Assembly: GCA_030390025.1 (NCBI GenBank)
Contig: CM059429.1
Span: 138,570,001-138,634,000 of the forward strand
Direction of reading: 5' to 3'
From: Squalus acanthias
Taxonomy: Eukaryota
Length of the DNA: 64,000 nucleotides
A program made the translations under genes and the position numbers. The notes beneath the pieces were generated by a model that saw nothing but the letters and a program-made list of their open reading frames with translations, had not been told where the DNA came from and did not search any database. Below, piece by piece: positions 4,351 through 33,593 of this stretch; within the stretch, counting starts at the first letter, position 1, and each line of letters opens with the position of its first letter.

Positions 4351-5645
4351 ACGATCAATTGTGTAATTCAGTCCCCAGTAAAAATATCAATACCATTCAA
4401 TAAAAATGGAATTAGATTTTTTCAGTCACTGTAAATAGGCATCCCTGATATTATCTCCTACATTGCATAAATACTCCATATTGTTAAAATCAGCAAATCT
4501 TCCAACTCACCTTGGGCAATGCCATAGGAAATCTACTAGAATAGAATAATAAATAGTTGAAATTGCATAAGAATCTGTAATTTTATGAAAGGATTCAAAT
4601 ATCATAAATCATGGGATCAAGAGTCAGAGAAGGCGGAAATGTAATAAAACTGCAAAAGCTATGAAGGGTTTTGCTAGGGTTAAAAGGGAAAGACTATTTC
4701 CTCTGGTTGGGCGTTGAGTGATGCAGGGCCTTCAATTAAAACTTGCCACCATGAGAGTGAGGAGGAAGGTTTGGGGAAATTCCTTTACACAGAAAGCTGT
4801 TGGAAAATAGACTTGTGCCACAAACCATAGTTGAATCAAAGGGCGTTCATTTTTAAAGGAAAACTGGGTAAATATTTGAAGCAGATGAAGACACAGAACT
4901 ATGGGGACAAAGGGATTAGTTCGGGATTGCTCCAGCAAAGAGCTGGCACGGCCACGAATGCCTTTCTTCCATGCTGTAAAGTTGTCGAGTTGTAAATGGT
5001 TATAGACATTAACTAAACTCTGAGATGGAATTACAATAGTTCGTTTCCATGTAGATTCTACCTACACGTTATCATCTCAATAAAGTGAAAACAATGTGAA
5101 CAAACAGATAACGGTAGGGCAGAAATTTCACTCAAGGATGACGAGGCTTCACAACAGAATGTGTAATACAGGATGAAACAGATTGACATCGGTCAGTAAC
5201 ACATCACGCAGCTCAGGTGATCTCATAAACCAAATGAATATTTTCTCGGTGTTACCTGATGTCCGGGCGAGTTCCATCAGCTAGAATTCGTGTGGTTTAC
5301 AGATGTATTTATTTTTGAATTTTTAAAGAAAGTTGTTGATGTCGGGGTCGGGTGATTGTACCACTCAGTATAAAATGACATGATACTGTATTACCAGGTT
5401 GAACTGCAATGATACAGGATTTTGCTGCACTGCATGTTAGGGGGAAATACATTTCAATTGCACAGAAGGAATGAAGAGACCGCCACATATATTTAGTTGA
5501 ACTATTCCATTCGGACTGCAACCATCCCCCGGTGTGATGTGACGCACTGTGCGCTACAACCGCAATAATCTCCCAGCGATCTTAATATTCTTTAGACCAG
5601 CCAACAGGTCTAACCAACCGGTGACTCGGTGCTTTCTTCAGCAAT

Positions 5646-5694
5646 ATGGCTCCATTTAGAAACATTGTTCTCAAACTCTGGCTCCTTGTCTTAG
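5646..5694 (+). CDS. Exon 1, signal peptide (MAPFRNIVLKLWLLVL-G)
   Basis: ATG at 5646, hydrophobic leader, donor G|GTAAGC at 5694/5695. Phase 1 split leader as in Ig/TCR-type genes. Confidence 0.85.
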
Positions 5695-8600
5695 GTAAGC
5701 ATTCACTCTTACCCCAATTGACAGTTATTCTAGTTGGACTCAGATAATTTGAATGTCATGTTCCTACTTGTTGTAATTTTATGTCCCAGGGCCTGCTGTC
5801 GGTCTGAAAGTGATCCAGTCTCCTTTAGCTCTGTCCCTCCTGAGAGGACAGACAGCTCGGATCAACTGCACCCTGTTACCCGGAGAGGAGCGGCTGGATT
5901 CGGGGAGATATTATTGGTTTAGGACAAGAGACAATCCTGGTATCAGAGGCAACAAAACTAGGAATGTCCTCAATAAAAGCTCTCGTGTGTCTCTATCTGA
6001 GGGCTCGCTTATCATCCGGGAGGTGATTGTGGACGATTCCGACACTTACCACTGCCTGGTTCTTAGAGAGGAGCCTCGGCCCTGGAAAGAATTTACAGGA
6101 GAGGGAACAGAACTGAACATCCAAGGTAATTAGATGAACCAAAACTGAAATAGTTCAATGTATTGGGGCAAAGGAATCAGAACTCGCTCCACACACATAT
6201 CTAATCTGGGACTGACATGCTCTGTGCACTGGAGACTGGACTGAATACACCAGCGTTTAACTTTAATTCCACAATATCCATTAAACAACAGGGGCTTTCA
6301 TATAGTTTGAAGAAAAACATCCAAAAGACAAAACTGTAGAATGCTGATACCAATACTAACAGCGGAATATAATTTATATAACAAGCGAATTGCAAATAGA
6401 GAAACTGATTTTGTGAAATAAGTATTGTCATTTTATTTCAATTTTCTTGATGATATTGGTCCAAAGAAAAACAAAGGGAATTTGTACCCGAACGAAACTT
6501 ACTGTAAAGTAACGGGATATTATTGAGGCTCGTTTTCCATTCTGTTCCGTGTGTTGGATTTTATTATATATAAACCTAGTGATTTGTATATTGAGACATA
6601 ATCTAATCAAATTGATTCTTCAGTTTCTCATTTAGTTTCAAATATGCACAAGTTTAAATCTTTTTTGTACAGTTGCACTCTATATAAGGTCGGGCAGCAT
6701 CTGTGGAGAGAGAAGCAAAGGGATTGTTTCAGGTCGATGACCTGTCGATTCTCTCTCCACAGCTGCTGCCCGACCTGCTGAGTATTTCCAGCATTTTCTG
6801 TTTTGATTCCAGACTTCCAGCATCCGCTGTATTTTGATTTGTCTCTCTATATATTTGCTATAACTCAGATTGATATAACTTGTGATATTTTAATGTTTAT
6901 TTAGCGGAACCTGAAGTCTATCTCTCTGCGGATCCCGAGAATGAAGTTGTTGGGATTCAGTCTCTGACTTGTGTGGCGGCGGGATTTTTCCCGAGAGGTC
7001 TGAACATTTCTTGGATTGTAGCGGGAGATGTATCCTATCAAATAGAACCGGACTCCCTGACAGGAAACAGTGACGGCACCTTCAACCTGAGCTCCCGGCT
7101 GCGGATTACAGACACTCACTGGGACCCGGGAACCGCCGTCACCTGTCAGATTCAACACGTTACACTGAAAGTGTCAGTGAGGAAAAGTTTCAGTGACAGC
7201 GGAGGTAAGTTGTTGACAAAGGGAATAAAGCTGCTCCCAGTTACTGTTAATATATGGAGGTAAAAATAGTAATTTTATGTAACCACGCGTAAAAGGCGAC
7301 TCATTAATCCGGATAGAATTACAAAAGGTAACGCGCGATGTGCACACCGGAGGTCTCAATTTTTAACGCGTAGCAATAAACAAATTGCACGTTTCAATAA
7401 ATTACATTGATGCAATACAGACGCTGTGTTTTATTGCTAAATATTACAGATAATGATGGTATGTCGAGAAGGCGGGTGAATTGAGTTAGGCAACATTAAC
7501 CAACTAGACTGAAACACAAAACAGCTGGAAATGCACAGCAGCTGGGACCAGAGCTATTCATCTCAAACATTGACAGGTCTTCTTTACCGATGCGAACAGA
7601 CCTGCCATGTATTTCCAACATATTTTTTTTACTGATGCCGACTAGATAGATTCGCTTCTAGTGTTTTACAGCAGAGAATAACTCAAAGAAATACAAAAAT
7701 GGAGCGAGTTAAAAACCTTTGTTCTTACACTGAGCTGTTTCAGGGCTCGTTTATAAACCGTCCGCTGTGGAATCGGTTTTAACTGCCGAGTTCTGGTTTG
7801 ACACGGACAGACTCGATAAAATATGATTAAAAAGCAGTCATTAAATGTCCTTCGTGTAACTGAAAAGTTCTACATCATTGAATGAATTTCATTTATTCTG
7901 GCTTCATAAATCGACAGAGGAAAAGTCGCCGGGAACCAGAATGGGCAAGTTTAAACAGTACAAAACAGACATCTCGATCGCACAGTTTATGCCCCAGAGC
8001 CGCTTTACTGCTCACTCTGACTTACCTTGATTTCCATATTTGAAAAGGAAGAATGTAGAAGGGTGGGGGGAGGACAGGGAATTGAGATAAGGTTAGGTAA
8101 AAGCTAGCACGGTCACATAAGCAGTGGGCCGAATGGTCTCCCCCTTGTGCTGTCATTCCTATGATTCCGATTAACAACCATTTGCCACTGAACCAGTTGA
8201 CAGAATTCTCAATTTTGTAGCAGCTGTGAATAAAATGCAGACATTTGCAATGTGGCGTTTATGTCCGCAAAAAAAGCGCCCAATATTACCAGACACATTT
8301 ACATGCCTTCCGCCAAGTCTCCACCTATTGATTCTGTTATAATACCAGCTGTATACAGGCCATCGTCTTGATTTCAGGCAATAGGTGATAGAACACCACT
8401 ACCACGCGTTGGGCACATATACCAGCTTCATTCAATAGCAACATTCTGCGGATGCTGGCAATCTGAAATAACAGAAAATGTTGGAAACACTCAGCAGGTC
8501 AGGCAGCATCCGTGGAGAGAGAGAAACAGAGTTAACGTTTCAGGTCTGGGACCCTTCTTCAGAACTGGAAAAGGCTAGAGATGTAACAGATGTAAGGGTC

Positions 8601-11600
8601 CCAGACCTGAAACGTTAACTCTGTTTCTCTCTCCACGGATGCTGCCTGGCCTGCTGAGTATTTCCAGCATTTTCTGTTGTACCAGCTTCATTGTTTGGTT
8701 AAATTACAAAGCATGTTAAGATTTTAGATTCTGAAGGAGAGTATGAGCGAGTAAAAGCCACTGTGTCCATTCAGTTCATCCCTTCACACCTCAGGGCATT
8801 AAAAGGCTCTGTATCTCGTTTCTATCCCTGCTTATTAAAGCTCAATTAGTAATAATTATTTAATTCCCCAATCTCGACATTTTTTTTACAAGTACCCTCT
8901 TCTTTAAGTTAATATATACAAATGAAACAGCGAGAAAACAGATTTAAAACATACAAAGATATCGTTTAGCCGCTAGCAGGGTTGAGAGCTATGGTTATAC
9001 AGCCCGCTTTAAGCGCTTGAGAGGGTGGCTACTGGGCGATGACATGTATGGGCGCATTGGATTTGTACGTCTGCAGGAAGCTTTGCATAGTAATCTTGGA
9101 CAGCAGTGAATTATTACTGACTTGAGAAGTATTCTATAATTGGGACTGCAGCGGCCTGCCTTAGGCTACCCGTGTTTGGTTGATGCAAAGTGGGTTTTTT
9201 GGGTGCACATCAATACAGAAGTGGCATTATAACTCAGAAGACTGCAGAATGCACTAAAGTCGTTGGGGTATAAGATTTCCTTCTGGAGGCTACCTCGCAA
9301 TGGTTTCTGTTTCCAAAGTGTGCAGTATAAATCCAGTCTTAATTTTTTTATTTAATATTTTCTGCTGTCATTAGCATACCTGTCAGACCAGAAAACTAAC
9401 TAAAGCTGACCAACTGCTTCAGAAAAGCTCACACAGCCCCAGAAAAGCTGGTAGCTCAATAATAGGACTCAATACAGGCCTCTCCACACATGGAGTTAGA
9501 CTGAGAGTGTAGTGGGATATGGGCTTGCCATAACAATCTGCAGACATAGCCAGCATATACAAACACACAGCGACAGTGGTGATTTAGCAATGACTGAAGA
9601 TGGATGCAAATGCTGAAGGCATGAGATTTATTTTCAACAACAACAACTTGCATTTACATAGCACCTTTAACATAGTAAAACATCCCAAGACGCTTCACAG
9701 GAGCTATTATCAAACAACATTTGACACCAAGCCATATTTAAAAAAATCAAATGAAATTCGTCACCTCACCAATCTCATCCCTATTTTATTTCCAAACTCA
9801 GGCAATTCTGTAACTGAGGTCATCTGTATTCTCAAATGAAGTTAGTTGGTGCATTCAGACCAGGGAACATCACATTATCTCAAAAAGGCAGCTGCAACCA
9901 CCCTTTAAGAAAAGAAGCCTTCATATGAAACAACAATCCCCCTCATAGTTCCTTTGAGGAAAACAAAAGTTTGAAAAACTGTATTTTAGCAGCTTATCTG
10001 TTATATATAACTTCTTTGGGACCAAACATTAAGTACACACACCTATACAAACACACAGCGACAGTGGTGATTTAGCAATGACTGAAGATGGATGCAAATG
10101 CTGAAGGCATGAGATTTATTTTCAACAACAACAACTTGCATTTACATAGCACCTTTAACATAGTAAAACATCCCAAGACGCTTCACAGGAGCTATTATCA
10201 AACAACATTTGGGCAACACGGTGGCATAGTGGTTAGCACTGTTGCCTCACAGCGCCAGGGACCCGGGTTCGAATCCGGCCTCGGTTAACTGTCTGTGTGG
10301 AGTTTGCACATTCTCCCCGTGTCTGCGTGGGTTTCCTCCGGGTGCTCCGGTTTCCTCCCACAGTCCAAAGATGTGCAAGTTAGGTTGATTTGGCTATGAT
10401 AAAATTGACCCTTAGTGTTAGGGGGATTAAATATGTGGGGTTACGGGGATAGGGTGGGATATGTGCAGGCTCGATGGGCTGAAATGGCCTCTATCTGCAT
10501 TGTGGGGATTCTATGACCTAAATGTGACTCTCAGAAACCAGCAGTTAATTTCCAATTGTTCACCTCAAATTTGCAACCAAGAAATAATGAAAGTAGCATC
10601 TGATTGATTCCAGTTCTACCCTCCAACCAGTCCAGTCCTGACAGGCTCCAGTTCCAACTTTCAAATGATCTGATTGATTATACTGACAACCTCCAATGAA
10701 CCTGAAAAAAAAGTTGAAATTTCTTGTGAAACACTGACAAACTGGCAGGTTGAAATATTAACTGTCAGCTTGAAACACTGACGGCTGTCATGTATGCACT
10801 GATGCGAATTAAAAATAGCGCAAGTATACACGGACAACTTGCTTATTATTAGCTGACCAGGGCAACATTACAGTTGGATATAGCCAAAGGTATGGGATGA
10901 GGGGATGGGAAGGAGAAAGAATGCATAAACATTGTAAAGTAGTTCTGCAAATAGCCGGCATAATTTGAGCAGGGAGTTGAGGTTAAGCTGCCACTTCAAG
11001 CCTGTACAACTGCTGTAGCAGCGGTGGGGGAGAGGGTTCAGTAAGGTGATGGCAGAGCATTGGTATTGTGCACTCAAGTTACATGGATAATTTGCTTCTT
11101 ATTATCTGACCATGGTAAATTTATTACTGTTAGTTTAGATTAGCTATGGAAAAGGACAGGGAGCAAGCTAGAGTAAAAATACTTAATTGGAGGAGGGCCA
11201 ATTTCAGTGGGTTGAGAACAGATCTGGCCCGGGTAAATTGGAATCAATGATTGGCAGGCAAAACTGTAATCGATCAATGGGCTACCTTTAAAGAGGAGAT
11301 GGTTCGGTACAGTTGAGGTACATTCCCACGAGGGGGAAAGGTAGGGCAGCAAAAGCCAGAGCTCCTTGGATGACGAAAGAGATAGAGAGCAGGATGAATC
11401 AGAAAAGGGGCTGTATGACAGCTGTCAGGTTGAGAATACAAGTGAGAACCAGGCTGAATATAGAAATTTCAGAGGGGAAGTGAAAAAGGAAATAAGAGGG
11501 GCAAAAAGAGAATATGAGAATAGACAGGCAGCTAACATAAAAGGGAATCCAAAAGTCTTCTATAAGCATATAAATAGTAAATGAGTAGTAAGAGGGGTGG

Positions 11601-14600
11601 GGCTGATTAGGGACCAAAAAGGAGACCTACGCATTGAGGCAGAGGGCATGGCTGAGGTACTAAATAAGTATTTTGCATCTGTCTTTGACAAGGAAGAAGA
11701 TGCTGCCAAAGTCATAGTGAAAGAGGAGATAGTTGAGATACTGGATGGGATAAAACTTGATAAAGAGGTGGTACTGGAAAGGTTGGCTTTACTTAAAGTG
11801 GATAAGTCACCAGGACTGGATGGGATGCATCCTAGGATGCTGAGGGAAGTAAAGGTGGAAATTGCAGAGATACTGGCCATAATCTTCCAATCCACCTTAA
11901 AAATGGGGGTGGTGCCAGAGGACTGGAGAATTGCAAATGTCACAGCCTTGTTCAAAAAAGGGTGTAAGGATAAACCCAGCAACTACAGACCAGTCAGTTT
12001 AACCTCGGTAGTGGGGAAGCTTTTAGAAACGATAATCTGGGACAAAATTGGCAGTCACTTGGACAAGTGTGGATTAATTAAGGAAAGCCAGCACAGATTT
12101 GTTAAAGGCAAATCGTGTTTAACTAACTTGATTGAGTCTTTTGATGAGGTAACAGAGAGGGTTGATGTGGTGTACATGGACTTCCAAAAGGCGTTTGATA
12201 AAGTGCCACATAATAGGCTTGCCAGCAAAATTGAAGCCCATGGAATAAAAAGGACAGTGGCAGCATGGATACGAAATTGGCTAAGTGACAGGAAACAGAG
12301 AGTAGTGGTGAACAATTGTTTTTCGAACTATAGTGGTGTTCCCCAGGGGTCGGTACTAGGACCACTGCTTTTCTTGATATATATTAATGACTTGGACTTG
12401 GGTGTACACGGCACAATTTCAAAATTTGCAGATGACACAAAACTTGGAAGTATAGTGAACAGTGAAGAGGATAGTGATAGACTTCAAGAGGACATAGACA
12501 GGCTGGTGGAACGGGCGGACACATGGCAGATGAAATTTAACGCAGAAAAGTGCAAAGTGATACATTTTGGTACGAAGAACGAGGAGAGACAATATAAACT
12601 AAAGGGTACAATTCTAAAGGGGATGCATGAACAGAGAGACCTGGGGGTATATATGCACAAATGGTTGAAGGTGGCAGGGCAGGTTGAGAAAACAGTTAAA
12701 AAAGCATACAAGATCCTGGGCTACATAAATAGAGGCATAGAGTACAGAAGCAAGGAAATTATGATGAACCTTTATAAAACACAGGTTCGGCCTCAACTGG
12801 AGTATTGTGTCCAATTCTGGGCACCACACTTTAGGAAGGAGGTGAAGGCCTTAGAGAGGGTGCAGAAAAGATTTACAAGAATGGTTCCCGGGATGAGAGA
12901 CTTCAGTTACGTGGATAGACTGGAGAAGCTGGGGTTGTTCTCCTTAGAGCAGAGAAGGTTGAGAGGAGATTTGATAGAGGTGTTCAAAATCATGAGGGGT
13001 CTAGACAGAATAGATAGAGGAGAAACTGTTCCCAAATGGGGGAAGGGTCGAGAACCAAAGGACACAGGTTTAAGGCGATTGGCAGAAGAACCAAAGGCGA
13101 CATGAGGAAAACCTTTTCACGCAGTGAGTGGTTAGGATCTGGAATGCACTTCCTGAAAGGGTGGTGGAGGCAGATTCAGTCATTCCTTTCAAAAGGGAAT
13201 TGGATAAGTACTTGAAGGAAAAAAAATGCAGGGCTACGGGGAAAGGGCGGGGGAGTGGGACTAGCTGAAGTGCTCTTGCAGAGAGCCGGCATGGGCTTGA
13301 CAGGCTGAATGGCCTCCTTCTCTGCTGTAACCATTCTATGATTCTATCATGAAGTGTTAGGGAATGGAAGCACAGCTGGCTGTCTTAGCTTTTAAAGTTA
13401 TTTTTGAATATCTGTACAGTTATTTGGTACAAAGTAAAAATATCACAAGAACATTTCTTAGGGTGCAGTAATTTTGCAATGATGCAAAGTGATTTTGGAT
13501 GTTGTTCAATTAAAAGTGGTAATATAACTCAGGAAGTTACTCAGCACATTAAAACAGTGTGGTGTGAGATCCCTGCAGACAGTGATAACATCCCTCATGA
13601 ATAATAAGAATATTACCATAGAGACCTAGGACTCCATGGCGGAATGGGCTTTCTCCTCCAACCAATAAAAGACTGCTACATTTCTTTGAGGATTATTAGT
13701 AGAAATAGGATAATGCATGATTATGTAATATTACTATTTCTACAAATGGAAGTTTTCTTGACATCTATCCTCAATGGAGTTCCTGCTGGGTGAATCCTAT
13801 TGGTATAGTTCACAAGAACAAGTCAACTCAAAAACTCAGAAATTACAGATGTTAAATATATTTCTGATTCAATATATGGTTTAAATAATATATGAAGATG
13901 CATATTTAAAAGTGTTGCATGTAATGTAATATATATCACTTATGTTTGTAATTAATTGCAACTAATTGTTTTGATTCACATTTCAATTGTAATTTTGAAG
14001 GTATTCCCAAGTACTACTATTACTTCAGCCTGCTGAGTCTTATCCTCATTGTACTATTTTGTCTCTGGATCATTAAGAGTCAGTGCAGTAAACTGAAGAA
14101 TGGAAAAGGTAATCAGATACAATGTACATTTTATTTTGTAACTGAACTAAACATATCAAAAGTGAAAATTGTATTTAAATTGTATTTAGAAGAAATAATT
14201 CCAACAAAAAATAATGTAAAAAATGAAAACCAATTTCATATTCCATCTAAAATTCACTTTTTGGAAAGAACATATTAACATAACCTGTAAAATTAATATA
14301 GTTAAGCTAAGGGAACTGTACTAATATAGGTTTATATGATTTTTTTTAACATAGCTAACTATAAATATCTTTGCATCCAAATATCCTAACATAGTTTTCA
14401 TGTGTAAATGATGAAGCCTCAGATGTAAGGTAAAAATGGGAATGGTGATACTCACTAGTATCTAAAAGTTATAGACTCTTTTTATTGTTGCTTCTCACTG
14501 CATACACCACTATACTATATGTTACACTAAGACATTTCTAATATTCATGATATTCATATAGATTCATCGATCCATGACAAAAATGTTGATGATCAAATAA

Positions 14601-17600
14601 TGGGAAAAGGGCTGAATGAATCAGTAAATGCTGTAAGTATATTGTTTTGATATTTTTCCTACACTGCATGCACCTGCACTGTGCTGAACTGAATGCATTA
14701 TAAAGTATCGTCAGCTCATTTAAATAAATTGTCAGCACTCTTGGACATGATGCACTGGGAACACAAAGGGGGCAGAATATCTAGTGCCAGTGGGGTGGAT
14801 ATTATTTTTACCATTGCCTGGAGGGAGTGCAGCGAGGAAAATTGGGTGGGGAGCATCACATCACTGCCATGGGGCCCGCCCAATTTTCCTTCCAGCATTA
14901 GTTGGTACTAGCCTGGAGTTTGCAAAATCATCCTGTAATATCCATCCTGACTTTTTCTATGTACTCAGAGCCCACAATCTCAAGGGTCAACTTCTCCTGG
15001 AGACTTAAAGATTTAATATTGAGAGGAGCTCCACCAGTTTTGTGCCAGTTCCTTCTCTTATGGGCTCCTTTTTCCTGTAAACAGATACAAATGATAAAAT
15101 GTTGGGAGTCTGAAAAGTGCACATGTTGCCCCCATGCATCCAAACCTATGCACAACTCAATGCATTTCCAGCATGCACATCAATGGTGATGAAACATAAG
15201 AACATAAGAAGTAGGAGCAGGAGTAGGCCATATGGCACCTCGGGCCTGCTCCGCCATTCAATAGGATCATGGCTGATCCGAACCTAGACTCATGTCCACT
15301 TCCCTGCCCGCTCCCCATAACCCTTAATTCCCTTATCAGCTAGGAAGCTACATTAGTGGGCAACATCAGCCGTGTGAAAACGAGTGAAAGAGGCTGAAGA
15401 TTGGCATGTGTCCACATTCCAGATGTAGCTGGTTGAGATAAAAGTCTTTGTTCCAGGTATGCCATACCAATATACTTGATGTAGTTAAATGCAACAACTC
15501 TTTCCTTGGGAAACTTCCTCAAGGTGGATTTTTTTTTCCATCTGGACAACAGACCTAGACCTATACATGGGAAGGTGGCAGTAAATTATTGTGACCTCCT
15601 CCCAGGCAAACCAGACAGCCAAGTTTTGTGCCCCTCTTTTCCAAAAAGAGCAGCCCTTTATTGTTGCACCTCTTCCAGAAAAGCTCTACAAGGCTGAGTC
15701 AAAAAAGTTGGTTGTCTTTTCACTTGGCCCAGGCCTGCTTCCAAATAAAGCAATCTTTGACTTCATTTCAACAAGTTTCAGCGGGCAAAAGTAACCTACT
15801 CCTAATGCCTCAGCACTCCTTGAAATAACATTGGCAGCAGCTTCTTATGAACTATTGCTGTGCTGGGTATACCGTTCCCAGCATTGGCTCGCTCCCTGCA
15901 CAGGGATCAATGAATAATTATGTGGATAAGCAGACCTCGAAATGTTGCAGGTCTATTCCATGTTCCATTGTTGCGAGCTGTGCTCACAGCATCCAGTCTG
16001 GGCTGCAATTAGCTGAGACAGGAAAATCCACCCTTAAGTTACAAGCTTTCCAGGGCGAGGTTGTCCAAGGACCACTGATATTAGCAATATAGGTCAGGCT
16101 TGGGAACATTAATATACTTTTTTTGTAAATTCTCCAAATTGCTGATATTTTGGGACCATTGCTGAAGTAACACTAAAGCCTACTGGTCTTTTATACAGTG
16201 TTTTGTTAATCTGGGGAAATATCAAGGGTGGGGGGCGGTAGGGGCTGGTGATGGGGTAGGGTGCCTATTTCTCTATAACTACCATTTGTTTAGTTCTAAC
16301 TCTTTTGGTCCTTTGTCAGAATATGATAGCATTGTAAAGATTGCTAGCCAACACCAACTGAGGATTATTTTCTGAAATAATAATAAACTATGAAAGTGAT
16401 GATACTAGGATTTTGCATTGGATCCCAGTCTTGTTAACTAATTATTCCAGGAGGTAAAATGATGAATTGCAGTCCTCAAAAAATGTCTGTGTCTTTTTAT
16501 TTGGCTACCCCATCTGCTTCAGATGCGTGACAATATTGTTGTTGGATCCTCGCTTGCCACAATGGTACATGTGATTTGTGTAATTCACATTTAATGGGCT
16601 ATTTTATTTTAAACTGCCGCTGAAGTTTTGCCATTTTTAAATAAATTTTCGCTCTTCTACTCCTGAAGGCATTCGCTGGAGTATGGTTCCATGGTCCCAG
16701 CAGCTGTCACATAAATTGCCCAGATGGCTTTTCTTCAGGTGTTAGTCTATGCAGTGAACATTAGCAGGTTGTTTGACCAGAGGGGGCATCGTGGCAAGCG
16801 GGTACACATACACACACTCACGCACATACTTTTCAGCAGGAGTCACTGGGAAGCATTCAGGAGTACAAACCTTCTTCTATCCCTAGAACAGTAGCACTCA
16901 GGCCAACTGTACTGGCCCAGCTGCTGCCAGATAGAGATCAGGGAATCAGAACTGGAATCTTTTGGTCTGTATGGATTAATAAACACTGGGTGATGCTTTA
17001 CCCAGTAGTCCATCACTGAATGCGTTACAGTAGAGAGTGATTGAGGTGGATTATGTCTCTGGCGCATATTGGGCAGGTGTTGGCCTGCTTAAATACAACA
17101 GGCGGGCTGTCAGCACTAATCACGCTGCCTACAGGGAGCTCACTGTTTGGGAGGGCTGGAAATCCAGCCGAATGGCCTCCTTCTGTGCCGTTATGAATCT
17201 ATGACTTCAACATCCCACAGTCCTTAAAAACGAGGTTCACTTTTCAAAGGTAGTCTGTGTGAACAGTGCGTTACCGAGGCAGCATGACATCGGCCAGGGC
17301 CCCCTGATTCTCCAATACAGCCGTGGAGCTGCAAATGAGGAACAGGAAGGAGGTCTTCTTTACCAGTGATGGCCGCCAGGTGCCCCGGCAAATTAGCCAG
17401 CAACAGTGGAGAGAGCTGGCTGGGCATGTCAATCAATGATTTCAGTGAAATGAACATCAGGCAGGGTCGCTAAAGGGCCTGCGATCCACCCTGTCAGACT
17501 ACTGCCCAGGCAGTGAAGACAGAAATCTACAGTTTAATTGCTTCCCATTGGATGTTTGCTATTGGAGGTGGGTATTTGACATTTCCATGTGGCTTTGCAT

Positions 17601-17992
17601 CATACAACAGGAAGACAGCATTTACGCTAAATCAAGGTCAGGCCAAAAATGTAATGTAAAATAATGTGTTGTGCTTTTTAATGATATAAGTGTGTGTGTT
17701 CTTATTGTTGTTTGTTATTACTATGTTACAGGGTAATGTTTCTTTCAGCAGTGAAACTCTGCATTATGTATCTGTTCATATCAACGATCCTCTGAAGAGG
17801 AAGCAAAAACAGAAATTGAAAAGATTAGAGCAGGACCAGGCAACTGAATACGCTGTTTTAAAGGTCAAAGATAAAAATAACCCATATGGTGAAGAATCGC
17901 TACATTACTCCACTGTCACCATTTGTCCCACATCAAGCAGAACACAAACTGTTAACTACAATGCAGCCACGTATGTTTCACTTAAGCTTTAA
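5646..17992 (+). CDS. Ig-superfamily V(J)-C1-TM-ITIM receptor gene (SIRP-like / non-rearranging antigen-receptor-like), whole gene span
   Basis: Exons 5646-5694, 5790-6125, 6905-7204 and 14001-14108 have GT/AG borders and join in phase 1 without stops. The terminal exon is 17732-17992. With a 32-nt linker exon (17619-17650, uncertain) the CDS is 1083 nt + stop = 361 aa. Confidence 0.88.
5790..6125 (+). CDS. Exon 2, V-set Ig domain with in-exon J-like segment
   Basis: Acceptor TCCCAG|G. Translation PAVGLKVIQSP...ARINC...YYWFR...SLIIREVIVDDSDTYHC...PWKEFTGEGTELNIQ has the B-strand Cys, C-strand Trp, DxxxYxC and a GxGT G strand. Donor G|GTAATT. Confidence 0.92.
6687..6838. mobile_element. Penelope-like terminal-repeat fragment (partially inverted) in intron 2
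   Basis: AGGTCGGGCAGCATCTGTGGAGAGAG ... CTCTCTCCACAGCTGCTGCCCGACCTGCTGAGTATTTCCAGC inverted pair; same family as 8433-8679. Confidence 0.55.
6905..7204 (+). CDS. Exon 3, C1-set Ig constant domain
   Basis: Acceptor TTTAG|CG. AEPEVYL...LTCVAAGFFPRGLNISW...NSDGTFNLSSRLRI..HW.PGTAVTCQIQHVTL shows the C1 signatures CxAxGFxP, NxDGTF and CxxxH. Donor G|GTAAGT. Confidence 0.92.
8433..8679. mobile_element. Palindromic Penelope-like element end with 13-bp TSD and hammerhead-ribozyme core
   Basis: Long inverted arms (~8472-8555 vs ~8594-8677), flanked by TACCAGCTTCATT at 8420-8432 and 8680-8692. The minus strand reads CTGAAGA-AGGGTC-CCA-GACCT-GAAACGTT. Confidence 0.7.
9556..10211 (+). repeat. 168-bp exact direct duplication (9556-9723 = 10044-10211)
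   Basis: Identical sequence at offset 488 (duplicate ORFs at 9600 and 10088). The second copy abuts a SINE head. Confidence 0.9.
10211..10515 (+). mobile_element. tRNA-derived V-SINE (HE1-like)
   Basis: Box A TGGCATAGTGG, box B GGTTCGAATCC, V-domain GTGTGGAGTTTGCACATTCTCCCCGTGTCTGCGTGGGTTTCCTCCGGGTGCTCCGG, and a CR1-like 3' tail ending GATTCTATG. Confidence 0.85.
11090..13349 (+). mobile_element. 5'-truncated CR1 LINE with largely intact RT ORF (11597-13105), in intron 3
   Basis: 502-aa ORF with [35 protein letters not shown] and FADD. 3' UTR and ATTCTATG tail. Same subfamily as 1776-4350. Confidence 0.93.
14001..14108 (+). CDS. Exon 4, transmembrane segment (GIPKYYYYFSLLSLILIVLFCLWIIKSQCSKLKNGK)
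   Basis: Acceptor TTTTGAAG|GT, phase 1 matches the C1 exon. ~21 uncharged hydrophobic residues followed by Lys-rich stop-transfer. Donor G|GTAATC. Confidence 0.8.
15195..15340 (-). mobile_element. CR1 3' tail fragment
   Basis: Starts with (ACATAAGA)2; reverse complement of the tail family seen at 180-450. Confidence 0.7.
17619..17650 (+). CDS. Candidate small cytoplasmic linker exon (AFTLNQGQAKN)
   Basis: The TM exon ends in phase 1 but the terminal exon acceptor at 17731 is phase 0. A 32-nt exon ACAG|CA...AAT|GTAATG reconciles them. Neighbouring AGs (17610, 17614) and a donor near 17637 give alternative solutions, so the boundaries are uncertain. Confidence 0.35.
17732..17992 (+). CDS. Terminal cytoplasmic exon with four tyrosine inhibitory motifs
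   Basis: Polypyrimidine tract + TTACAG|GGT. Encodes LHYVSV, TEYAVL, LHYSTV and ATYVSL. Stop TAA at 17990-17992. Confidence 0.85.
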   Translation, partial: GNVSFSSETLHYVSVHINDPLKRKQKQKLKRLEQDQATEYAVLKVKDKNNPYGEESLHYSTVTICPTSSRTQTVNYNAATYVSLKL

Positions 17993-18274
17993 ACATTTGA
18001 TATATTTATTTAGGTGACCTTAAACTCTGATGTGATCTAACAACAAATGTGATTTTTGTGAAGTACAGCTTTGCAGCTACAAATACATAAACAAATGTAA
18101 TATTAAAGTGGCTCCAATGTCTCAAAATGGACTTTGACAGTCATTGTTCCTTTAAACCGAACTCAAATAAGGTATTGATAGTTGAAATGCTTAGCGTACA
18201 AGGTGATGTTTACCAGATTCATTGAACATTTATATGCTTCATTTACTACCTTTTGCAATTAGTTAAATTCTACT

Positions 18275-18300
18275 AATAAATAGTTTGATGATTTAATAAA
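18275..18300 (+). promoter_or_regulatory. Candidate polyadenylation signals of the receptor gene
   Basis: AATAAA at 18275-18280 and 18295-18300, ~290 nt after the stop, followed by T/GT-rich sequence. Confidence 0.55.
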
Positions 18301-18869
18301 GTTTATTACATTTTCCTCCCTTTTTTGTTTGACTGCATTTTGCGTATTTTTCATATCTTAAGTATAATCAAAAATAACATTGGTGTTTTTTTTTTGTTGA
18401 GCTTTCTGTCAAGGTAATTGATGTCTTAAATCAGACTGTGGGGCGATTTTCACCTCTTGATTATCTCATTTGCGCTCAAAACTGGAGCAATAGCGGGTGG
18501 AAAATAAAATAGCTGTTCATCTCGCCCACTTATGCCTGTTTTTATAGCTGATCAGATTTTCGAGGTCACATCAATCCTGGTGGCCAGACCTCCACATGAC
18601 CTCCACATGAAACAGGCTTATGAATAAATTCAAATTGTGGTCAAGTGGCCATGCCGACCCCAATTTCACAACCGCATTGTCTGACTGCCGCCAATTTCTG
18701 CTCCCACCCACCAACCATGTGCATCCATTTTAAATGCTATTTGAAAGGATCCTCAGCTGCTATCAAGTAAAGTTGTATAGAGCATTTGGAGACAGCTTTA
18801 TTGCTGTCGTTTCTGGATTTTTTTTTTGACCTTGAAGGATTTAAAAGTGTTTGCAGTTGCTAATGTAAG

Positions 18870-19225
18870 CTGTTAATTACAGAAGGACCTAGACAATATT
18901 TGCAAGTGGGTGCAATTTTGGCAGATAAAATTCAATGGAGATAAGTGGAACAAAATTGATTGAATGGTATTGAACTAGCTAGGAAGAGGCTGAAAGTGAC
19001 CTGGGAATCAAAGTCTCAACACTGGCCTTGTCCAGTCATTGCAGAGTAGCAATTACCAAATAGCAATTACCAAAGCAAATAGGATGCTGAGCCATATTGG
19101 TAAATCAGAAAAAGTATAAATCTACACGTAGAGGCTGTCATGCTGAAGCTGTACAGAGCTCTGCTCAATGGCTGCACCTTGAATACTGCATTCAGTTATG
19201 GTCACCAAGGAACAGGGAAACATTT
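18870..19225 (+). mobile_element. Old CR1 RT fragment
   Basis: Degenerate DLD..W...WQIKFN and HLEYCIQLWSP motifs. Confidence 0.55.
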
Positions 19226-31727: not shown

Positions 31728-33593
31728 ATGGAAAAACTCCTTAGACCCGCTCGTCTCGACCTGGACCCGAATGCACCTGCGGCAGCAAAGGTATGGAAGC
31801 ATTGGTTTCGTACCTTTAGCAACTTTCTTGAAGAATGTGGGGCGGATGTCCCTAATAAGTTACGAATGCTTATCAACTACGTGTCTCCTCATGTGTATGA
31901 TTATATTGAGGACTGTATAGACTATGACACTGCTATCGAAATCTTACAGCAGCTATATGTCAAGTCCACAAATGAAATCTTTGCTCGACACCTACTGGCT
32001 ACAACTCGGCAGCAGCCTGGGGAATCACTCGATGAATTTCTCCAGAAACTTCGCAGGCTCAGCAAGGATTGTAACCTTAAAGCAGTTTCAGCTGAACAGT
32101 ATCAAGAGGAACTAATCCGCTATTCCTTTATCAATGGAATCGCGTCCCCTTTTATACGTCAGCGCCTGCTGGAAAATAAAACCCTCAATTTACGGGCTGC
32201 TTATGACCAGGCGTGTTCCTTGGACTTGGCCAAGAAAAATGCAGACACTTATCTCCCACCACGTGCACGGGCGGCGGCTATCTCCTTTAATGAGTCTTTC
32301 GGTAGGTCTCGGGCGGATGCCCCCACTGATGTTGACTCTACTCTAACAGACGACAACCCTACCCTAGAGGCCTTCGCTGATGACGACCCCGCCCTAGCAG
32401 CATCCTGGCAATCAGGGAGAAAGTGTTTCTTTTGTGGAGGGGCGTGCCATCACAGAAAATTTTGCCCGGCTCGTAATGTGACCTGCAATCATTGCAGCAA
32501 GAAAGGACACTTTTCCAAGGTATGCCAGTCACGGGCCTTTGCTAACAAGAAAGGCCGCTCCTCTAAAGTATACCGGTCGAGAGCTCCTGTTAGCTTCACA
32601 GCTGCTATCTATGGAGCTGCTCCTCCCCCAAGAACTACTGTTAAGGCTACAGTTGCCGAAGGGAAAATTGCCCCTCCTCCCATCACGGCTGTTTTTCCCC
32701 AAAGTTTGTCCCATGCAGCCACGAAGGTTTCAGTAAATGGGCACACTCTAAGCGCGCTAATCGACTCCTGCAGCTCTGACAGCTTCATTAGTAAGCGGGC
32801 TGTCAACAGGTTAAAACTGCACATTTATCCCTCGGACAGGGAGATTGCAATGGCTCTGACGACTCTGACCACCAATTCTTCTGGCTTCTGTCTGGTCAAC
32901 CTCATCCTCAACGGCCGCACGTATCTCTCCACCCGGCTCGGAGTACTCGCAAACTTATGCAGCGATGTGCTTCTGGGACAGGACTTCCAGAAGCAGCACA
33001 AGAAGATCACTTTTGAGTTTGGAGGGTCAAGGCCGGAGCTTACCATTTCTAAGGTGCCGTTTTGTGCACTCTCGGCGGCCTTACTCGGTGAACCCTCCCT
33101 GTTTGCCAATCTTCCCCCCCGCTGTAAACCCATAGCCACCAAATCGCGGCGCTTTAGCCAAGATGATCGAGCGTTTATTGAGGCGGAAATCTCTCGCCTT
33201 TTAGTCGACGGTATTATCGAGCCATGTTCATCTCCCTGGCGGGCTCAGGTCGTCATCGTGAGGAATCCCTTAAAACAACATAAAAAACGTCTGTGTATCG
33301 ATTATTCGCAGACTATTAATCTATATACCGATCTGGATGCCTACCCGCTGCCACGCATAGATGACATGGTCAACAACCTTGCCAAATACAAGGTATTCTC
33401 GACCTTCGATTTAAAAAGCGCGTACCATCAGGTGCCACTGCAAGACTCCGACAAGAAGTATACGGCCTTTGAGGCCAATGGTCGGCTTTTCCAGTTTCGC
33501 CGCCTTCCAACGGGCCATGGATGGCCTAGTCCGGCAAGAGAACTTGACGGATACCTTTCCGTATTTAGACAATATCACTATTGCCGGCCATGA
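31728..33593 (+). CDS. Gypsy gag-protease-RT N-terminal part
   Basis: Two CX2CX4HX4C knuckles (CFFCGGACHHRKFC, CNHCSKKGHFSKVC), protease LIDSCS, RT motifs SPW, RLCIDY, DAYPLPRI, FDLKSAYHQV. Frame breaks after FRRLP. Confidence 0.9.
   Translation: MEKLLRPARLDLDPNAPAAAKVWKHWFRTFSNFLEECGADVPNKLRMLINYVSPHVYDYIEDCIDYDTAIEILQQLYVKSTNEIFARHLLATTRQQPGESLDEFLQKLRRLSKDCNLKAVSAEQYQEELIRYSFINGIASPFIRQRLLENKTLNLRAAYDQACSLDLAKKNADTYLPPRARAAAISFNESFGRSRADAPTDVDSTLTDDNPTLEAFADDDPALAASWQSGRKCFFCGGACHHRKFCPARNVTCNHCSKKGHFSKVCQSRAFANKKGRSSKVYRSRAPVSFTAAIYGAAPPPRTTVKATVAEGKIAPPPITAVFPQSLSHAATKVSVNGHTLSALIDSCSSDSFISKRAVNRLKLHIYPSDREIAMALTTLTTNSSGFCLVNLILNGRTYLSTRLGVLANLCSDVLLGQDFQKQHKKITFEFGGSRPELTISKVPFCALSAALLGEPSLFANLPPRCKPIATKSRRFSQDDRAFIEAEISRLLVDGIIEPCSSPWRAQVVIVRNPLKQHKKRLCIDYSQTINLYTDLDAYPLPRIDDMVNNLAKYKVFSTFDLKSAYHQVPLQDSDKKYTAFEANGRLFQFRRLPTGHGWPSPARELDGYLSVFRQYHYCRP

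What the first reader, a model, noticed from the sequence alone, without database searches (positions are those of the whole stretch)
5646..17992. Germline-joined VJ-C1 membrane receptor with an inhibitory tail: antigen-receptor-like architecture without rearrangement
Seen: one exon encodes a V domain together with a CDR3-like loop (LVLREEPRPWKE) and a J-like G strand (FTGEGTELNI). No RSS is visible. It is followed by a single bona fide C1-set exon, a TM exon and a tyrosine-motif tail, with phase-1 domain exons and a split leader as in Ig/TCR genes. Established: C1 domains are confined to few families (Ig, TCR, MHC, B2M, tapasin, SIRP, some B7). SIRP-alpha is V-C1-C1 and NITRs lack C1. Non-rearranging VJ-C1 molecules are regarded as models of the pre-RAG antigen-receptor ancestor. 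Inference: in a cartilaginous fish, this V(J)-C1-TM-ITIM gene may be a little-described or undescribed receptor family linking SIRP/PRARP/VJC1-type genes with TCR/IgL chains.
Basis: partly seen in the sequence, partly recalled or inferred. Interest (0 to 1): 0.82.

Follow-up and report, generated by a model that had tools for sequence, protein, structure and literature searches.

The report
Shark SIRP-like V-C1 inhibitory receptor gene
This is a real, intact shark gene for a membrane receptor with an antibody-like tip, one constant-type domain and an inhibitory tail; relatives occur across sharks, rays and chimaeras, public databases label them loosely as SIRP-like, and my literature searches found no description of them.

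Summary
A six-exon gene lies on the + strand at 5646-17992. It has a split leader, one V exon that also carries the J-like strand, one C1-set exon, a TM exon and two cytoplasmic exons with ITIM/ITSM-type tyrosines. No RSS heptamer is present. One transcript-like contig shows the leader-V splice exactly. The other junctions are not confirmed by reads. They rest on a database protein from Heptranchias perlo (74-88% identical) that maps collinearly onto all six exons.

The gene is not unique or unrecorded. I collected 23 related proteins from 14 named cartilaginous-fish species. Automatic pipelines named them inconsistently: SHPS-1-like, SIRP-beta-1-like, Ig kappa-like, IgH-like, TCR-beta-like or uncharacterized. 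Some rays have two C1 domains. Three rays also have partner forms with an Arg in the TM and a short tail, as expected of paired receptors.

Human SIRP-alpha is the best collinear V+C1 match among solved structures. Six literature searches found no description of this family.

Verdict: a SIRP-like inhibitory receptor, a new variant of a known kind. Unchecked scan notes report similar genes elsewhere in this genome.

The parts
5646..5694 (+). Exon 1: ATG plus the first part of the split leader (MAPFRNIVLKLWLLVL + 1 nt); ends in phase 1
   Evidence: Read and translated. An X1 contig joins it to exon 2. P0065 residues 1-17 match at 88%.
5790..6125 (+). Exon 2: end of the leader plus the V-set domain, with the CDR3-like loop and the J-like G strand (…YHCLVLREEPRPWKEFTGEGTELNIQ) in one exon; phase 1 to 1
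   Evidence: Translation. Pfam V-set E 1.1e-9. AlphaFold model with pLDDT 84.8 and nine strands. Foldseek best matches are VNAR, SIRP-alpha V and TCR V. No RSS heptamer.
6905..7204 (+). Exon 3: C1-set domain (…LTCVAAGFFPRGLNISW…VTCQIQH…) plus a short stalk; phase 1 to 1
   Evidence: Translation. Pfam C1-set E 1.4e-14. Model pLDDT 86.9. Foldseek matches are IgG CH3, CL, MHC class I and II membrane-proximal domains and the B7-H6 C domain.
14001..14108 (+). Exon 4: transmembrane segment with no charged residue in its core, plus a basic juxtamembrane stretch; phase 1 to 1
   Evidence: Translation. P0065 residues 229-269 match at 78%. Orthologue isoforms P0070 and P0071 skip this exon in frame.
14562..14632 (+). 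Exon 5: short cytoplasmic exon (D)SSIHDKNVDDQIMGKGLNESVNA; it takes the frame from phase 1 to phase 0
   Evidence: Translation. P0065 residues 265-287 match at 78%. Splicing exon 4 directly to exon 6 would give an immediate stop (reading).
17732..17992 (+). Exon 6: cytoplasmic tail with LHYVSV, TEYAVL, LHYSTV and ATYVSL; stop TAA at 17990-17992
   Evidence: Translation. P0065 residues 288-373 match at 77%. The Y-A of the first motif and the Y-A-x-L-K of the second are nearly invariant in 10 family proteins.
18275..18300 (+). Two AATAAA hexamers (18275-18280 and 18295-18300), candidate polyadenylation signals about 290 nt after the stop
   Evidence: Seen in the sequence only. Not tested with reads.

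Best explanation
The region is an intact, expressed, non-rearranging gene for a type I membrane glycoprotein. Its parts in order are a leader, a V domain with a built-in J-like strand, one C1-set domain, a short stalk, an uncharged TM segment and a cytoplasmic tail of about 110 residues with four ITIM/ITSM-type tyrosines.

It is this species' copy of a gene family found across sharks, rays and chimaeras. The nearest characterised relatives of that family are the signal-regulatory proteins (SIRPs).

The likely mechanism is inferred, not shown. The V domain binds a conserved, probably host-encoded ligand. The C1 domain acts as a spacer. After ligand binding the tail tyrosines are phosphorylated and recruit SH2 phosphatases of the SHP-1/SHP-2 type, which dampens activation of the cell carrying the receptor.

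In rays the family also has partner genes with nearly the same ectodomain, an Arg in the TM and a very short tail. These would signal positively through an ITAM adaptor. The family therefore behaves as a paired inhibitory/activating receptor system, and the window holds the inhibitory type.
For: **The gene is intact and transcribed**
- Open exons with GT..AG introns and correct phases.
- The leader-V splice appears in one transcript-like contig with 0 mismatches.
- Contigs of a related organism B are 92-96% identical and break at the exon-2 acceptor, 5788-5791.

**Domain identity**
- Pfam V-set and C1-set, both above their cut-offs.
- Confident models whose Foldseek matches are antigen-receptor or SIRP V domains and classical C1 domains.

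**The family**
- The V exon searched against 1.84 billion representative proteins gave 56 hits at E<=1e-3. Only 5 are close relatives (50-72% identity): P0001-P0004 and P0009.
- Further searches raised this to 23 proteins from 14 named species plus one unnamed source.
- P0065 maps collinearly onto all six exons.

**SIRP likeness**
- A family profile searched against PDB sequences gave human SIRP-alpha as the best single collinear V+C1 stretch, at 69.0 bits, plus 43.5 bits for its third domain. Comparators: 60.6 bits for UrIg2 (end of V plus C1), 48.4 for a lambda V-C stretch and 45-51 for IgG CH3.
- The J and hinge regions align as GTkLniqAKP against GTELSVRAKP.
- 14 of the 23 proteins are auto-named SHPS-1-like or SIRP-beta-1-like.

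**Inhibitory tail**
- 13 of the 23 proteins carry 2-4 [SIVLT]xYxx[IVL] motifs in the tail.
- A caecilian V-C1-TM protein, P0028, has tyrosines at the same four aligned positions.

**Pairing**
- 3 of the 23 proteins have an Arg-containing TM and tails of 2-15 residues: Pristis P0058, Hemitrygon P0075 and Mobula hypostoma P0081.
- The V domains of the two Pristis forms are almost identical, with branch lengths of 0 and 0.0085.

**Conserved V**
- Mean pairwise identity is 60.9% for V and 59.1% for C1 over 11 species and 55 pairs. This argues for a conserved ligand.
Against: - No read evidence for the V-C1, C1-TM or cytoplasmic junctions. These rest on predicted proteins of other species.
- Taken alone, the V exon scores slightly better against shark VNAR (27.7 bits) and an Ig light chain (26.6 bits) than against SIRP-alpha V (22.2 bits).
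- The SIRP-named hits mostly hold 2-3 V domains whose scores add up, so their ranking over single-V Ig chains is partly an artefact.
- The V tree gives no supported sister relation to the amniote SIRP clade. The backbone support is 59/27 and the forks are drawn open.
- Sharks have one C1 where mammalian SIRPs have two.
- The fourth motif in the window (ATYVSL) lacks the usual residue at -2.
- Ligand, phosphatase binding, expressing cell type and synteny were not tested.
Confidence: 0.7

Rival explanations
1. It is simply the one-to-one cartilaginous-fish orthologue of SIRP-alpha. A C1 exon was lost in sharks, or gained in bony vertebrates and some rays. On this reading it is an already known gene.
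For: - SIRP-alpha is the best collinear V+C1 match in PDB.
- The tail has four tyrosine motifs, and activating partners with a basic TM residue exist in rays.
- Two ray species have V-C1-C1 forms: Hypanus P0003/P0059 and Mobula birostris P0066.
- Automatic names point to SIRP.
Against: - The V tree does not join the family to amniote SIRPs.
- Identity to SIRP V domains is only about 25-27%.
- The two C1 domains in rays are near-duplicates of each other within a species (sequences). This looks like a recent exon duplication, not an inherited d2/d3 pair.
- Unchecked scan notes report several such genes in this genome, which argues against a one-to-one relation.
Confidence: 0.25
2. It descends from a rearranging Ig light-chain or TCR cluster. 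On this reading that cluster was joined in the germline, as happens in sharks, and later gained a TM segment and an inhibitory tail.
For: - V-J-C1 order, split leader and phase-1 exons as in Ig and TCR genes.
- Three family proteins are auto-named Ig kappa-like, one IgH-like and one TCR-beta-like.
- VNAR and Ig light-chain V domains are the best single-sequence PDB matches for the V exon.
- An unchecked scan note places similar genes inside a light-chain array.
Against: - Identity to Ig light-chain and VNAR V domains is only 22-29%. That is far below what a secondary germline-joined copy would show.
- The family is shared by sharks, rays and chimaeras with the same TM and tail, so any such event would be ancient.
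- No stalk cysteine for chain pairing.
- No RSS remnant.
Confidence: 0.07
3. It is a short member of the UrIg/UrIg2 family of non-rearranging shark VJ-C1 genes.
For: - The UrIg2 chain (PDB 9dmx) has the highest summed score for the family profile, 125.6 bits. Its best stretch is 60.6 bits.
- Both have a VJ exon, a split leader and C1 domains (PMC12227049: sections 4 and 7 read).
Against: - The 125.6 bits are summed over three C1 domains. The best stretch covers only the end of V plus C1.
- UrIg is secreted, with three C1 domains. UrIg2 has nine C1 domains in nurse shark, and 11 in the epaulette shark gene model.
- A term search of that paper found no occurrence of 'ITIM' or 'SIRP'.
- No UrIg-named protein appeared among the 40 hits whose names I looked up or saw listed.
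Confidence: 0.05

Closest known systems
SIRP family (SIRP-alpha/SHPS-1, SIRP-beta, SIRP-gamma) of mammals and other tetrapods
   Same: - N-terminal V domain with a J-like GxG strand in one exon, followed by C1-set domain(s), a TM segment and a tail with four ITIM/ITSM-type tyrosines.
- Paired short-tailed forms with a basic TM residue, seen in rays.
- Similar J and hinge sequence (GTELNIQ-AEP here, GTELSVRAKP in human SIRP-alpha).
- Best collinear V+C1 match in PDB.
   Different: - One C1 instead of two in sharks.
- Only about 25-27% V identity.
- No supported grouping in the V tree.
- The basic TM residue of the partner forms is Arg. That SIRP-beta uses Lys is recalled, not tested here.
- CD47 binding is unknown.
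UrIg and UrIg2 (non-rearranging shark VJ-C1 genes; PMC12227049, PDB 9dmx)
   Same: Non-rearranging VJ exon, split leader, true C1 domains, found in cartilaginous fish, and similar C1 sequence.
   Different: UrIg is a secreted disulfide-linked dimer with three C1 domains. UrIg2 has nine or more C1 domains plus a TM. This gene has one C1, no stalk cysteine and an inhibitory tail.
Ig light chains and TCR chains
   Same: V-J-C1 order, split leader, phase-1 domain exons, and a V fold close to VNAR, IgL and TCR-alpha V.
   Different: No V/J split and no RSS. No interchain cysteine. It carries its own signalling tail.
Other cartilaginous-fish V-C1-TM genes (Callorhinchus LOC103180135 = P0042; Pristis P0051) and amphibian 'SHPS-1-like' genes (Rhinatrema P0028, Discoglossus P0040)
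   Same: - V(J)-C1-TM layout and the shared LNISW / LNVSW strand in C1.
- P0028 has tyrosines at the same four aligned tail positions.
   Different: - 27-34% identity to the window's V and C1 domains for P0028, P0042 and P0051; P0040 was not in those alignments.
- P0042 and P0051 have short tails with a single YxxL.
- They form separate clades in the V tree.

Membership tests
SIRP family | N-terminal V-set domain with the J-like strand encoded in the same exon | tested here: met
   One 336-nt exon encodes the V domain through …FTGEGTELNIQ. Pfam V-set. SIRP-alpha V is among the top Foldseek matches at E 2.9e-8.
SIRP family | Two membrane-proximal C1-set domains (V-C1-C1) | tested here: not met
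   The window has one C1 exon, and tblastn finds no second copy. 20 of the 23 family proteins have one C1. Three proteins from two ray species have two.
SIRP family | Cytoplasmic tail with four tyrosines in ITIM-type motifs that recruit SHP-1/SHP-2 | tested here: inconclusive
   The motifs are present: LHYVSV, TEYAVL, LHYSTV and ATYVSL, and they are conserved in the family. Phosphatase binding cannot be tested with these tools.
SIRP family | Paired activating members with a basic TM residue and a short tail | tested here: met
   This is met for the family: P0058, P0075 and P0081 in rays have an Arg in the TM and tails of 2-15 residues. None lies in this window.
SIRP family | Phylogenetic grouping of the V domain with bona fide SIRPs | tested here: inconclusive
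   In the ML tree of 69 V domains the family clade scores 98/98 and the amniote SIRP clade 100/99, but the backbone is 59/27 and open. No Ig or TCR outgroups were available.
SIRP family | Conserved synteny with the SIRPA locus | not testable with these tools
The rest of the window holds only transposon ORFs and a satellite.
SIRP family | Binding of CD47 | not testable with these tools
   No computation here addresses the ligand.
UrIg / UrIg2 | VJ exon followed by three (UrIg) or many (UrIg2) C1 domains; disulfide-linked dimer; secreted (UrIg) | tested here: not met
   This gene has one C1, a TM segment and an ITIM tail, and only the four canonical ectodomain cysteines. The UrIg features are taken from PMC12227049, sections 4 and 7.
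Rearranging Ig/TCR chains | Separate V and J segments flanked by RSS | tested here: not met
   V and J are continuous in one ORF. No CACAGTG or CACTGTG occurs in 5600-7300.
PRARP (chicken non-rearranging IgSF genes, Fu et al. 2019) | Sequence and architecture as described in that paper | not tested
   The paper is not held, and no PRARP-named sequence appeared in any search. I saw only citations of it.

The most novel reading that the evidence does not exclude
The family may be a surviving minimal 'one V(J) + one C1 + TM' chain from before or around the RAG invasion. It would be sister to both the SIRPs of bony vertebrates and the antigen-receptor/UrIg lineage, and it would already have been organised as paired inhibitory/activating receptors in the common ancestor of sharks, rays and chimaeras. 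If so, it would show what an antigen-receptor-like chain did before rearrangement, namely innate self or ligand sensing through ITIM and ITAM signalling.
Probability: 0.15. Interest if true: 0.75.

Novelty: new variant of a known kind. Interest (0 to 1): 0.5.

Why it matters
Non-rearranging VJ-C1 genes are sought as relics of the precursor of antibodies and T-cell receptors. Recent work on shark UrIg and UrIg2 rests on exactly this argument (PMC12227049, PMC10751288).

This family adds a third, much simpler layout that is conserved across cartilaginous fish. It has its own inhibitory tail and, in rays, activating partners. Public annotation gives it contradictory names (SIRP-, Ig kappa-, IgH- and TCR-beta-like), which shows that nobody has curated it.

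If it proves to be the cartilaginous-fish SIRP, that would date paired SIRP-type signalling to the base of jawed vertebrates. If it is a separate lineage, it bears on how V-C1 chains were used before rearrangement. Either result can be tested with existing shark genomes and RNA data.

Tried and rejected
**Paralogue in the window.** tblastn with the V and C1 exons, and with 20 family proteins, found nothing outside the six exons. There is no second copy and no alternative activating-type TM exon here.

**RNA evidence for all junctions.** The run search returned only six small contig-type runs with word shares of 0.06 or less. The single read-laying run covered exons 1-3 and showed only the leader-V joint. 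Most of the depth came from a repeat at 6683-6853 in intron 2.

**Outgroups for a decisive tree.**
- The third protein search, with caecilian P0028, returned only the query itself.
- The profile search with A2 returned only 21 proteins, all close family members apart from the query protein P0028.
- Proteins auto-named 'Ig kappa light chain-like' from Scyliorhinus torazame turned out to be multi-V membrane receptors, not light chains.
- No Ig, TCR, UrIg, NKp30 or PRARP sequences were therefore available, and I did not build a C1 tree.

**ESM Atlas.** The V exon gave only generic V-set clusters; the top one is 'putative antigen receptor (fragment)' at 0.95.

**Fold searches.** They confirm the fold classes but do not separate SIRP from Ig, TCR or VNAR.

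**SIRP enrichment.** I first read the SIRP-named hits as evidence for SIRP affinity. I then discounted this, because those hits carry 2-3 V domains whose scores add up.

**Papers.**
- The PRARP paper (PubMed 30770416) and the first UrIg paper (PMC10530332) are not held.
- Supplements were closed. The supplementary tables and figures of PMC12227049 and PMC10751288 may list further VJ-C1 genes that I could not see.

**Spliced model.** Each exon was searched by reference, and the natural database protein P0065 served as the full-length stand-in.

Full report
**1. What is in the sequence.**
Reading 5000-19000 shows six exons on the + strand, all with GT..AG introns.
- Exon 1 (5646-5694) starts at an ATG and encodes MAPFRNIVLKLWLLVL plus one base.
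- A 95-nt intron follows. Exon 2 (5790-6125, 336 nt) then encodes the rest of the leader and a complete V domain. It ends …DSDTYHCLVLREEPRPWKEFTGEGTELNIQ.
- Exon 3 (6905-7204, 300 nt) encodes EPEVYLSADPENEVVGIQSLTCVAAGFFPRGLNISW…VTCQIQHVTLKVSVRKSFSDSG.
- Exon 4 (14001-14108) encodes a TM segment with no charged residue in its core.
- Exon 5 (14562-14632, 71 nt) shifts the frame from phase 1 to phase 0.
- Exon 6 (17732-17992) encodes 86 residues with LHYVSV, TEYAVL, LHYSTV and ATYVSL, then TAA.

The quoted peptide strings are there. No RSS heptamer (CACAGTG or CACTGTG) occurs in 5600-7300, and V and J are one open frame.

**2. Domain identity.**
- Pfam gives V-set for exon 2 (E 1.1e-9, 38.9 bits against a cut-off of 26). 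It gives C1-set for exon 3 (E 1.4e-14, 54.7 bits against 21). C2-set_2 scores lower, at 30.6 bits.
- The window's V exon and C1 exon were each modelled with AlphaFold, using family alignments. Mean pLDDT was 84.8 and 86.9, and both models are all-beta.
- Foldseek against PDB gives, for V: shark VNAR (1.1e-8), human SIRP-alpha V (2.9e-8) and TCR V domains (3.2e-8). These are essentially tied.
- For C1 it gives IgG CH3 (3.4e-8), light-chain C, MHC class II beta-2, MHC class I alpha-3-type domains and the B7-H6 C domain.
- The C1 call is therefore sound, and the V domain is of the antigen-receptor/SIRP type.

**3. Is it expressed and spliced as proposed?**
- The run search returned six small contig-type runs. 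I laid four of them on 5600-7300.
- One 151-nt contig of X1 matches exon 2 from its start with 0 other letters. It carries a GT..AG joint that skips the 95-nt leader intron.
- Three contigs of a related organism B (X2-X4) are 92-96% identical. All three stop aligning at 5788-5791, the exon-2 acceptor.
- This supports transcription and the split-leader splice.
- Nothing covered the V-C1 junction or later junctions. The heavy depth at 6683-6853 is an intronic repeat.
- The remaining junctions rest on comparison. The Heptranchias perlo protein P0065 (374 aa) maps onto the six exons in order, with breaks at the predicted boundaries. Identities are 88, 80, 74, 78, 78 and 77%.

**4. Relatives.**
- The V exon was scored against 1.84 billion representative proteins. 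It gave 56 hits at E<=1e-3, 8 at E<=1e-10 and 2 at E<=1e-30. Only five are close: P0001-P0004 and P0009, at 50-72% identity.
- Word-indexed searches with P0002 gave 15 hits among 2070 candidates. A seven-sequence profile gave 21 hits among 4768 candidates. Cluster look-ups added more.
- In all I collected 23 family proteins. They come from Heptranchias, Heterodontus, Cetorhinus, Mustelus, Scyliorhinus, Stegostoma, Hemiscyllium, Pristis, Hypanus, two Mobula species, Hemitrygon, Narcine and Callorhinchus, plus one unnamed MetaClust entry.
- The MetaClust entry (P0009) is 83% identical in C1 to the Callorhinchus fragment.
- The source names are inconsistent:
  - 8 'tyrosine-protein phosphatase non-receptor type substrate 1-like' (that is, SIRP-alpha-like)
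  - 6 'signal-regulatory protein beta-1-like'
  - 3 'immunoglobulin kappa light chain-like'
  - 2 'uncharacterized'
  - 1 'Ig heavy chain Mem5-like'
  - 1 'T cell receptor beta chain-like'
  - 1 'Ig-like domain-containing'
  - 1 unnamed
- The gene is therefore on record as predicted sequence. It is clearly uncurated.

**5. Architecture across the family (sequences).**
- 20 of the 23 proteins have one C1. Three proteins from Hypanus and Mobula birostris have two C1 domains that are near-copies of each other.
- 13 proteins carry 2-4 [SIVLT]xYxx[IVL] motifs in the tail, and Narcine has one. The Y-A of the first motif and the Y-A-x-L-K of the second are nearly invariant.
- Two isoforms (P0070, P0071) skip the TM exon in frame, which predicts a soluble form.
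- Three ray proteins (Pristis P0058, Hemitrygon P0075, Mobula hypostoma P0081) have the same V-C1 but a different TM segment containing Arg, and a tail of 2-15 residues.
- In the V tree the Pristis Arg-TM and ITIM forms are almost identical.
- This is the signature of a paired inhibitory/activating receptor family. The window holds only the inhibitory type.
- Across 11 species the V domain is about as conserved as C1 (60.9% against 59.1% mean identity; V higher in 33 of 55 pairs). This fits a conserved ligand better than pathogen-driven diversification.

**6. Which known family is closest?**

For SIRP:
- A profile of ten family proteins was searched against all PDB sequences. The best single collinear stretch is human SIRP-alpha domains 1-2, at 69.0 bits over profile positions 22-218. 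Its third domain adds another 43.5 bits.
- UrIg2 gives 60.6 bits (end of V plus its first C1). A lambda chain gives 48.4 bits and IgG CH3 domains give 45-51 bits.
- The J strand and hinge align well with SIRP-alpha.
- A caecilian protein (P0028, auto-named SHPS-1-like) has V-C1-TM and tyrosines at the same four aligned tail positions.

Against, or neutral:
- As a single sequence, the window V exon scores 27.7 bits with a VNAR, 26.6 with a light chain and 22.2 with SIRP-alpha V.
- The SIRP-named hits in the big search (P0014, P0033, P0038, P0040, P0050) each have two or three V domains whose scores add up. Their presence above single-V Ig chains is partly an artefact.
- I built an ML tree of 69 V domains. 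It used the domains of 42 chosen proteins whose family-HMM match began at or before position 10 and ended at or beyond 105. Partial V domains and giant multi-Ig proteins were left out.
- That tree recovers the cartilaginous-fish family (17 rows, 98/98), a shark subclade that includes the window (9 rows, 100/99) and an amniote SIRP clade (13 rows, 100/99). The backbone is unresolved (59/27, open forks).
- I had no Ig, TCR, UrIg, NKp30 or PRARP sequences to add.
- Synteny could not be examined.
- 'Works like a SIRP' is therefore well supported. 'Is the SIRP orthologue' remains open.

**7. Other candidates.**
- UrIg is a secreted dimer of VJ plus three C1 domains. UrIg2 has nine C1 domains plus a TM in nurse shark, and 11 in the epaulette shark gene model (PMC12227049, sections 4 and 7 read). 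A term search of that paper found neither 'SIRP' nor 'ITIM'.
- This gene has a single C1, no extra ectodomain cysteine and an inhibitory tail, so it is not a UrIg.
- A recent origin from a germline-joined Ig or TCR cluster is unlikely. Identity to those V domains is only 22-29%, and the whole layout is shared with chimaeras.

**8. Literature.**
- Six full-text searches found no paper describing a SIRP-like V-C1 receptor in cartilaginous fish.
- PMC10751288 discusses VJ-C1 precursors, NKp30, PRARP and UrIg (passages seen).
- The PRARP paper and the 2023 UrIg paper are not held. Supplements were closed. A mention in those sources cannot be excluded.

**9. Context in this genome.**
- Unchecked first-stage notes report several similar genes on other pieces of the same genome. 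These include tandem paired clusters and a pair inside a light-chain array.
- I could not test these notes. The look-up by sequence was blank.
- If the notes are right, the family has many copies here. That weakens a one-to-one SIRPA orthology and strengthens the paired-receptor reading.

**10. Verdict.**
This is a real, probably functional inhibitory V(J)-C1 receptor gene. It belongs to a family found across cartilaginous fish that is SIRP-like in layout, tail and pairing, and that is recorded only as inconsistently named predictions. I rate it a new variant of a known kind, of moderate interest. Its bearing on antigen-receptor origins is possible but untested.

Noticed in passing
window 41645-64000: At least 22 kb of tandem satellite with a 21-nt unit (TGTTGTGTGCGGGTCTGTTCT), about 1100 copies and 88% matches. 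The + strand has almost no A (AT skew about -0.98). The array runs off the end of the window.
   Followed up: partly
window 11597-13105 (+), inside intron 3 of the gene: A 502-aa ORF with a reverse-transcriptase domain (Pfam RVT_1, E 4.2e-32). This is a LINE-type retroelement inserted in the 6.8-kb intron between the C1 and TM exons.
   Followed up: partly
window 31728-35637 (+): Two overlapping ORFs with aspartyl protease, RT, RNase H and integrase domains, i.e. an LTR retrotransposon of Gypsy type. This agrees with the scan note on this window.
   Followed up: partly
window 6683-6853 (intron 2) and 8440-8680 (intron 3): Hairpin-like short repeats that share the …GGCAGCATC[CT]GTGGAGAGAGA… / …TCTCTCCACAG…CTGAGTATTTCCAGCATTTTCTGT… arms. 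The first attracts very high contig depth in all four runs, so it is a high-copy element.
   Followed up: no
window 9560-9740 and 10040-10220: A direct repeat of about 170 nt (…CAAACACACAGCGACAGTGGTGATTTAGCAATGACTGAAGATGGATGC…) occurs twice about 480 nt apart in intron 3. The second copy is followed by a SINE-like, tRNA-related stretch (GGCACGGTGGC…GGTTCGAATCC-like), seen.
   Followed up: no
proteins P0032, P0088-P0093 (Scyliorhinus torazame), P0052 (Chiloscyllium), P0086 (Heterodontus), P0039 and P0046: Sharks and rays also carry multi-V (V-V or V-V-V) membrane receptors with J-like GxGT strands and no C1. They are auto-named 'Ig kappa light chain-like', 'SIRP-beta-like', 'turtle homolog' and so on. 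This is another uncurated set of non-rearranging VJ receptors.
   Followed up: no
proteins P0070 and P0071 (Heterodontus, Heptranchias): Predicted isoforms skip the 108-nt TM exon in frame, joining the C1 stalk directly to the cytoplasmic exons. This could be a soluble form or a modelling artefact.
   Followed up: no
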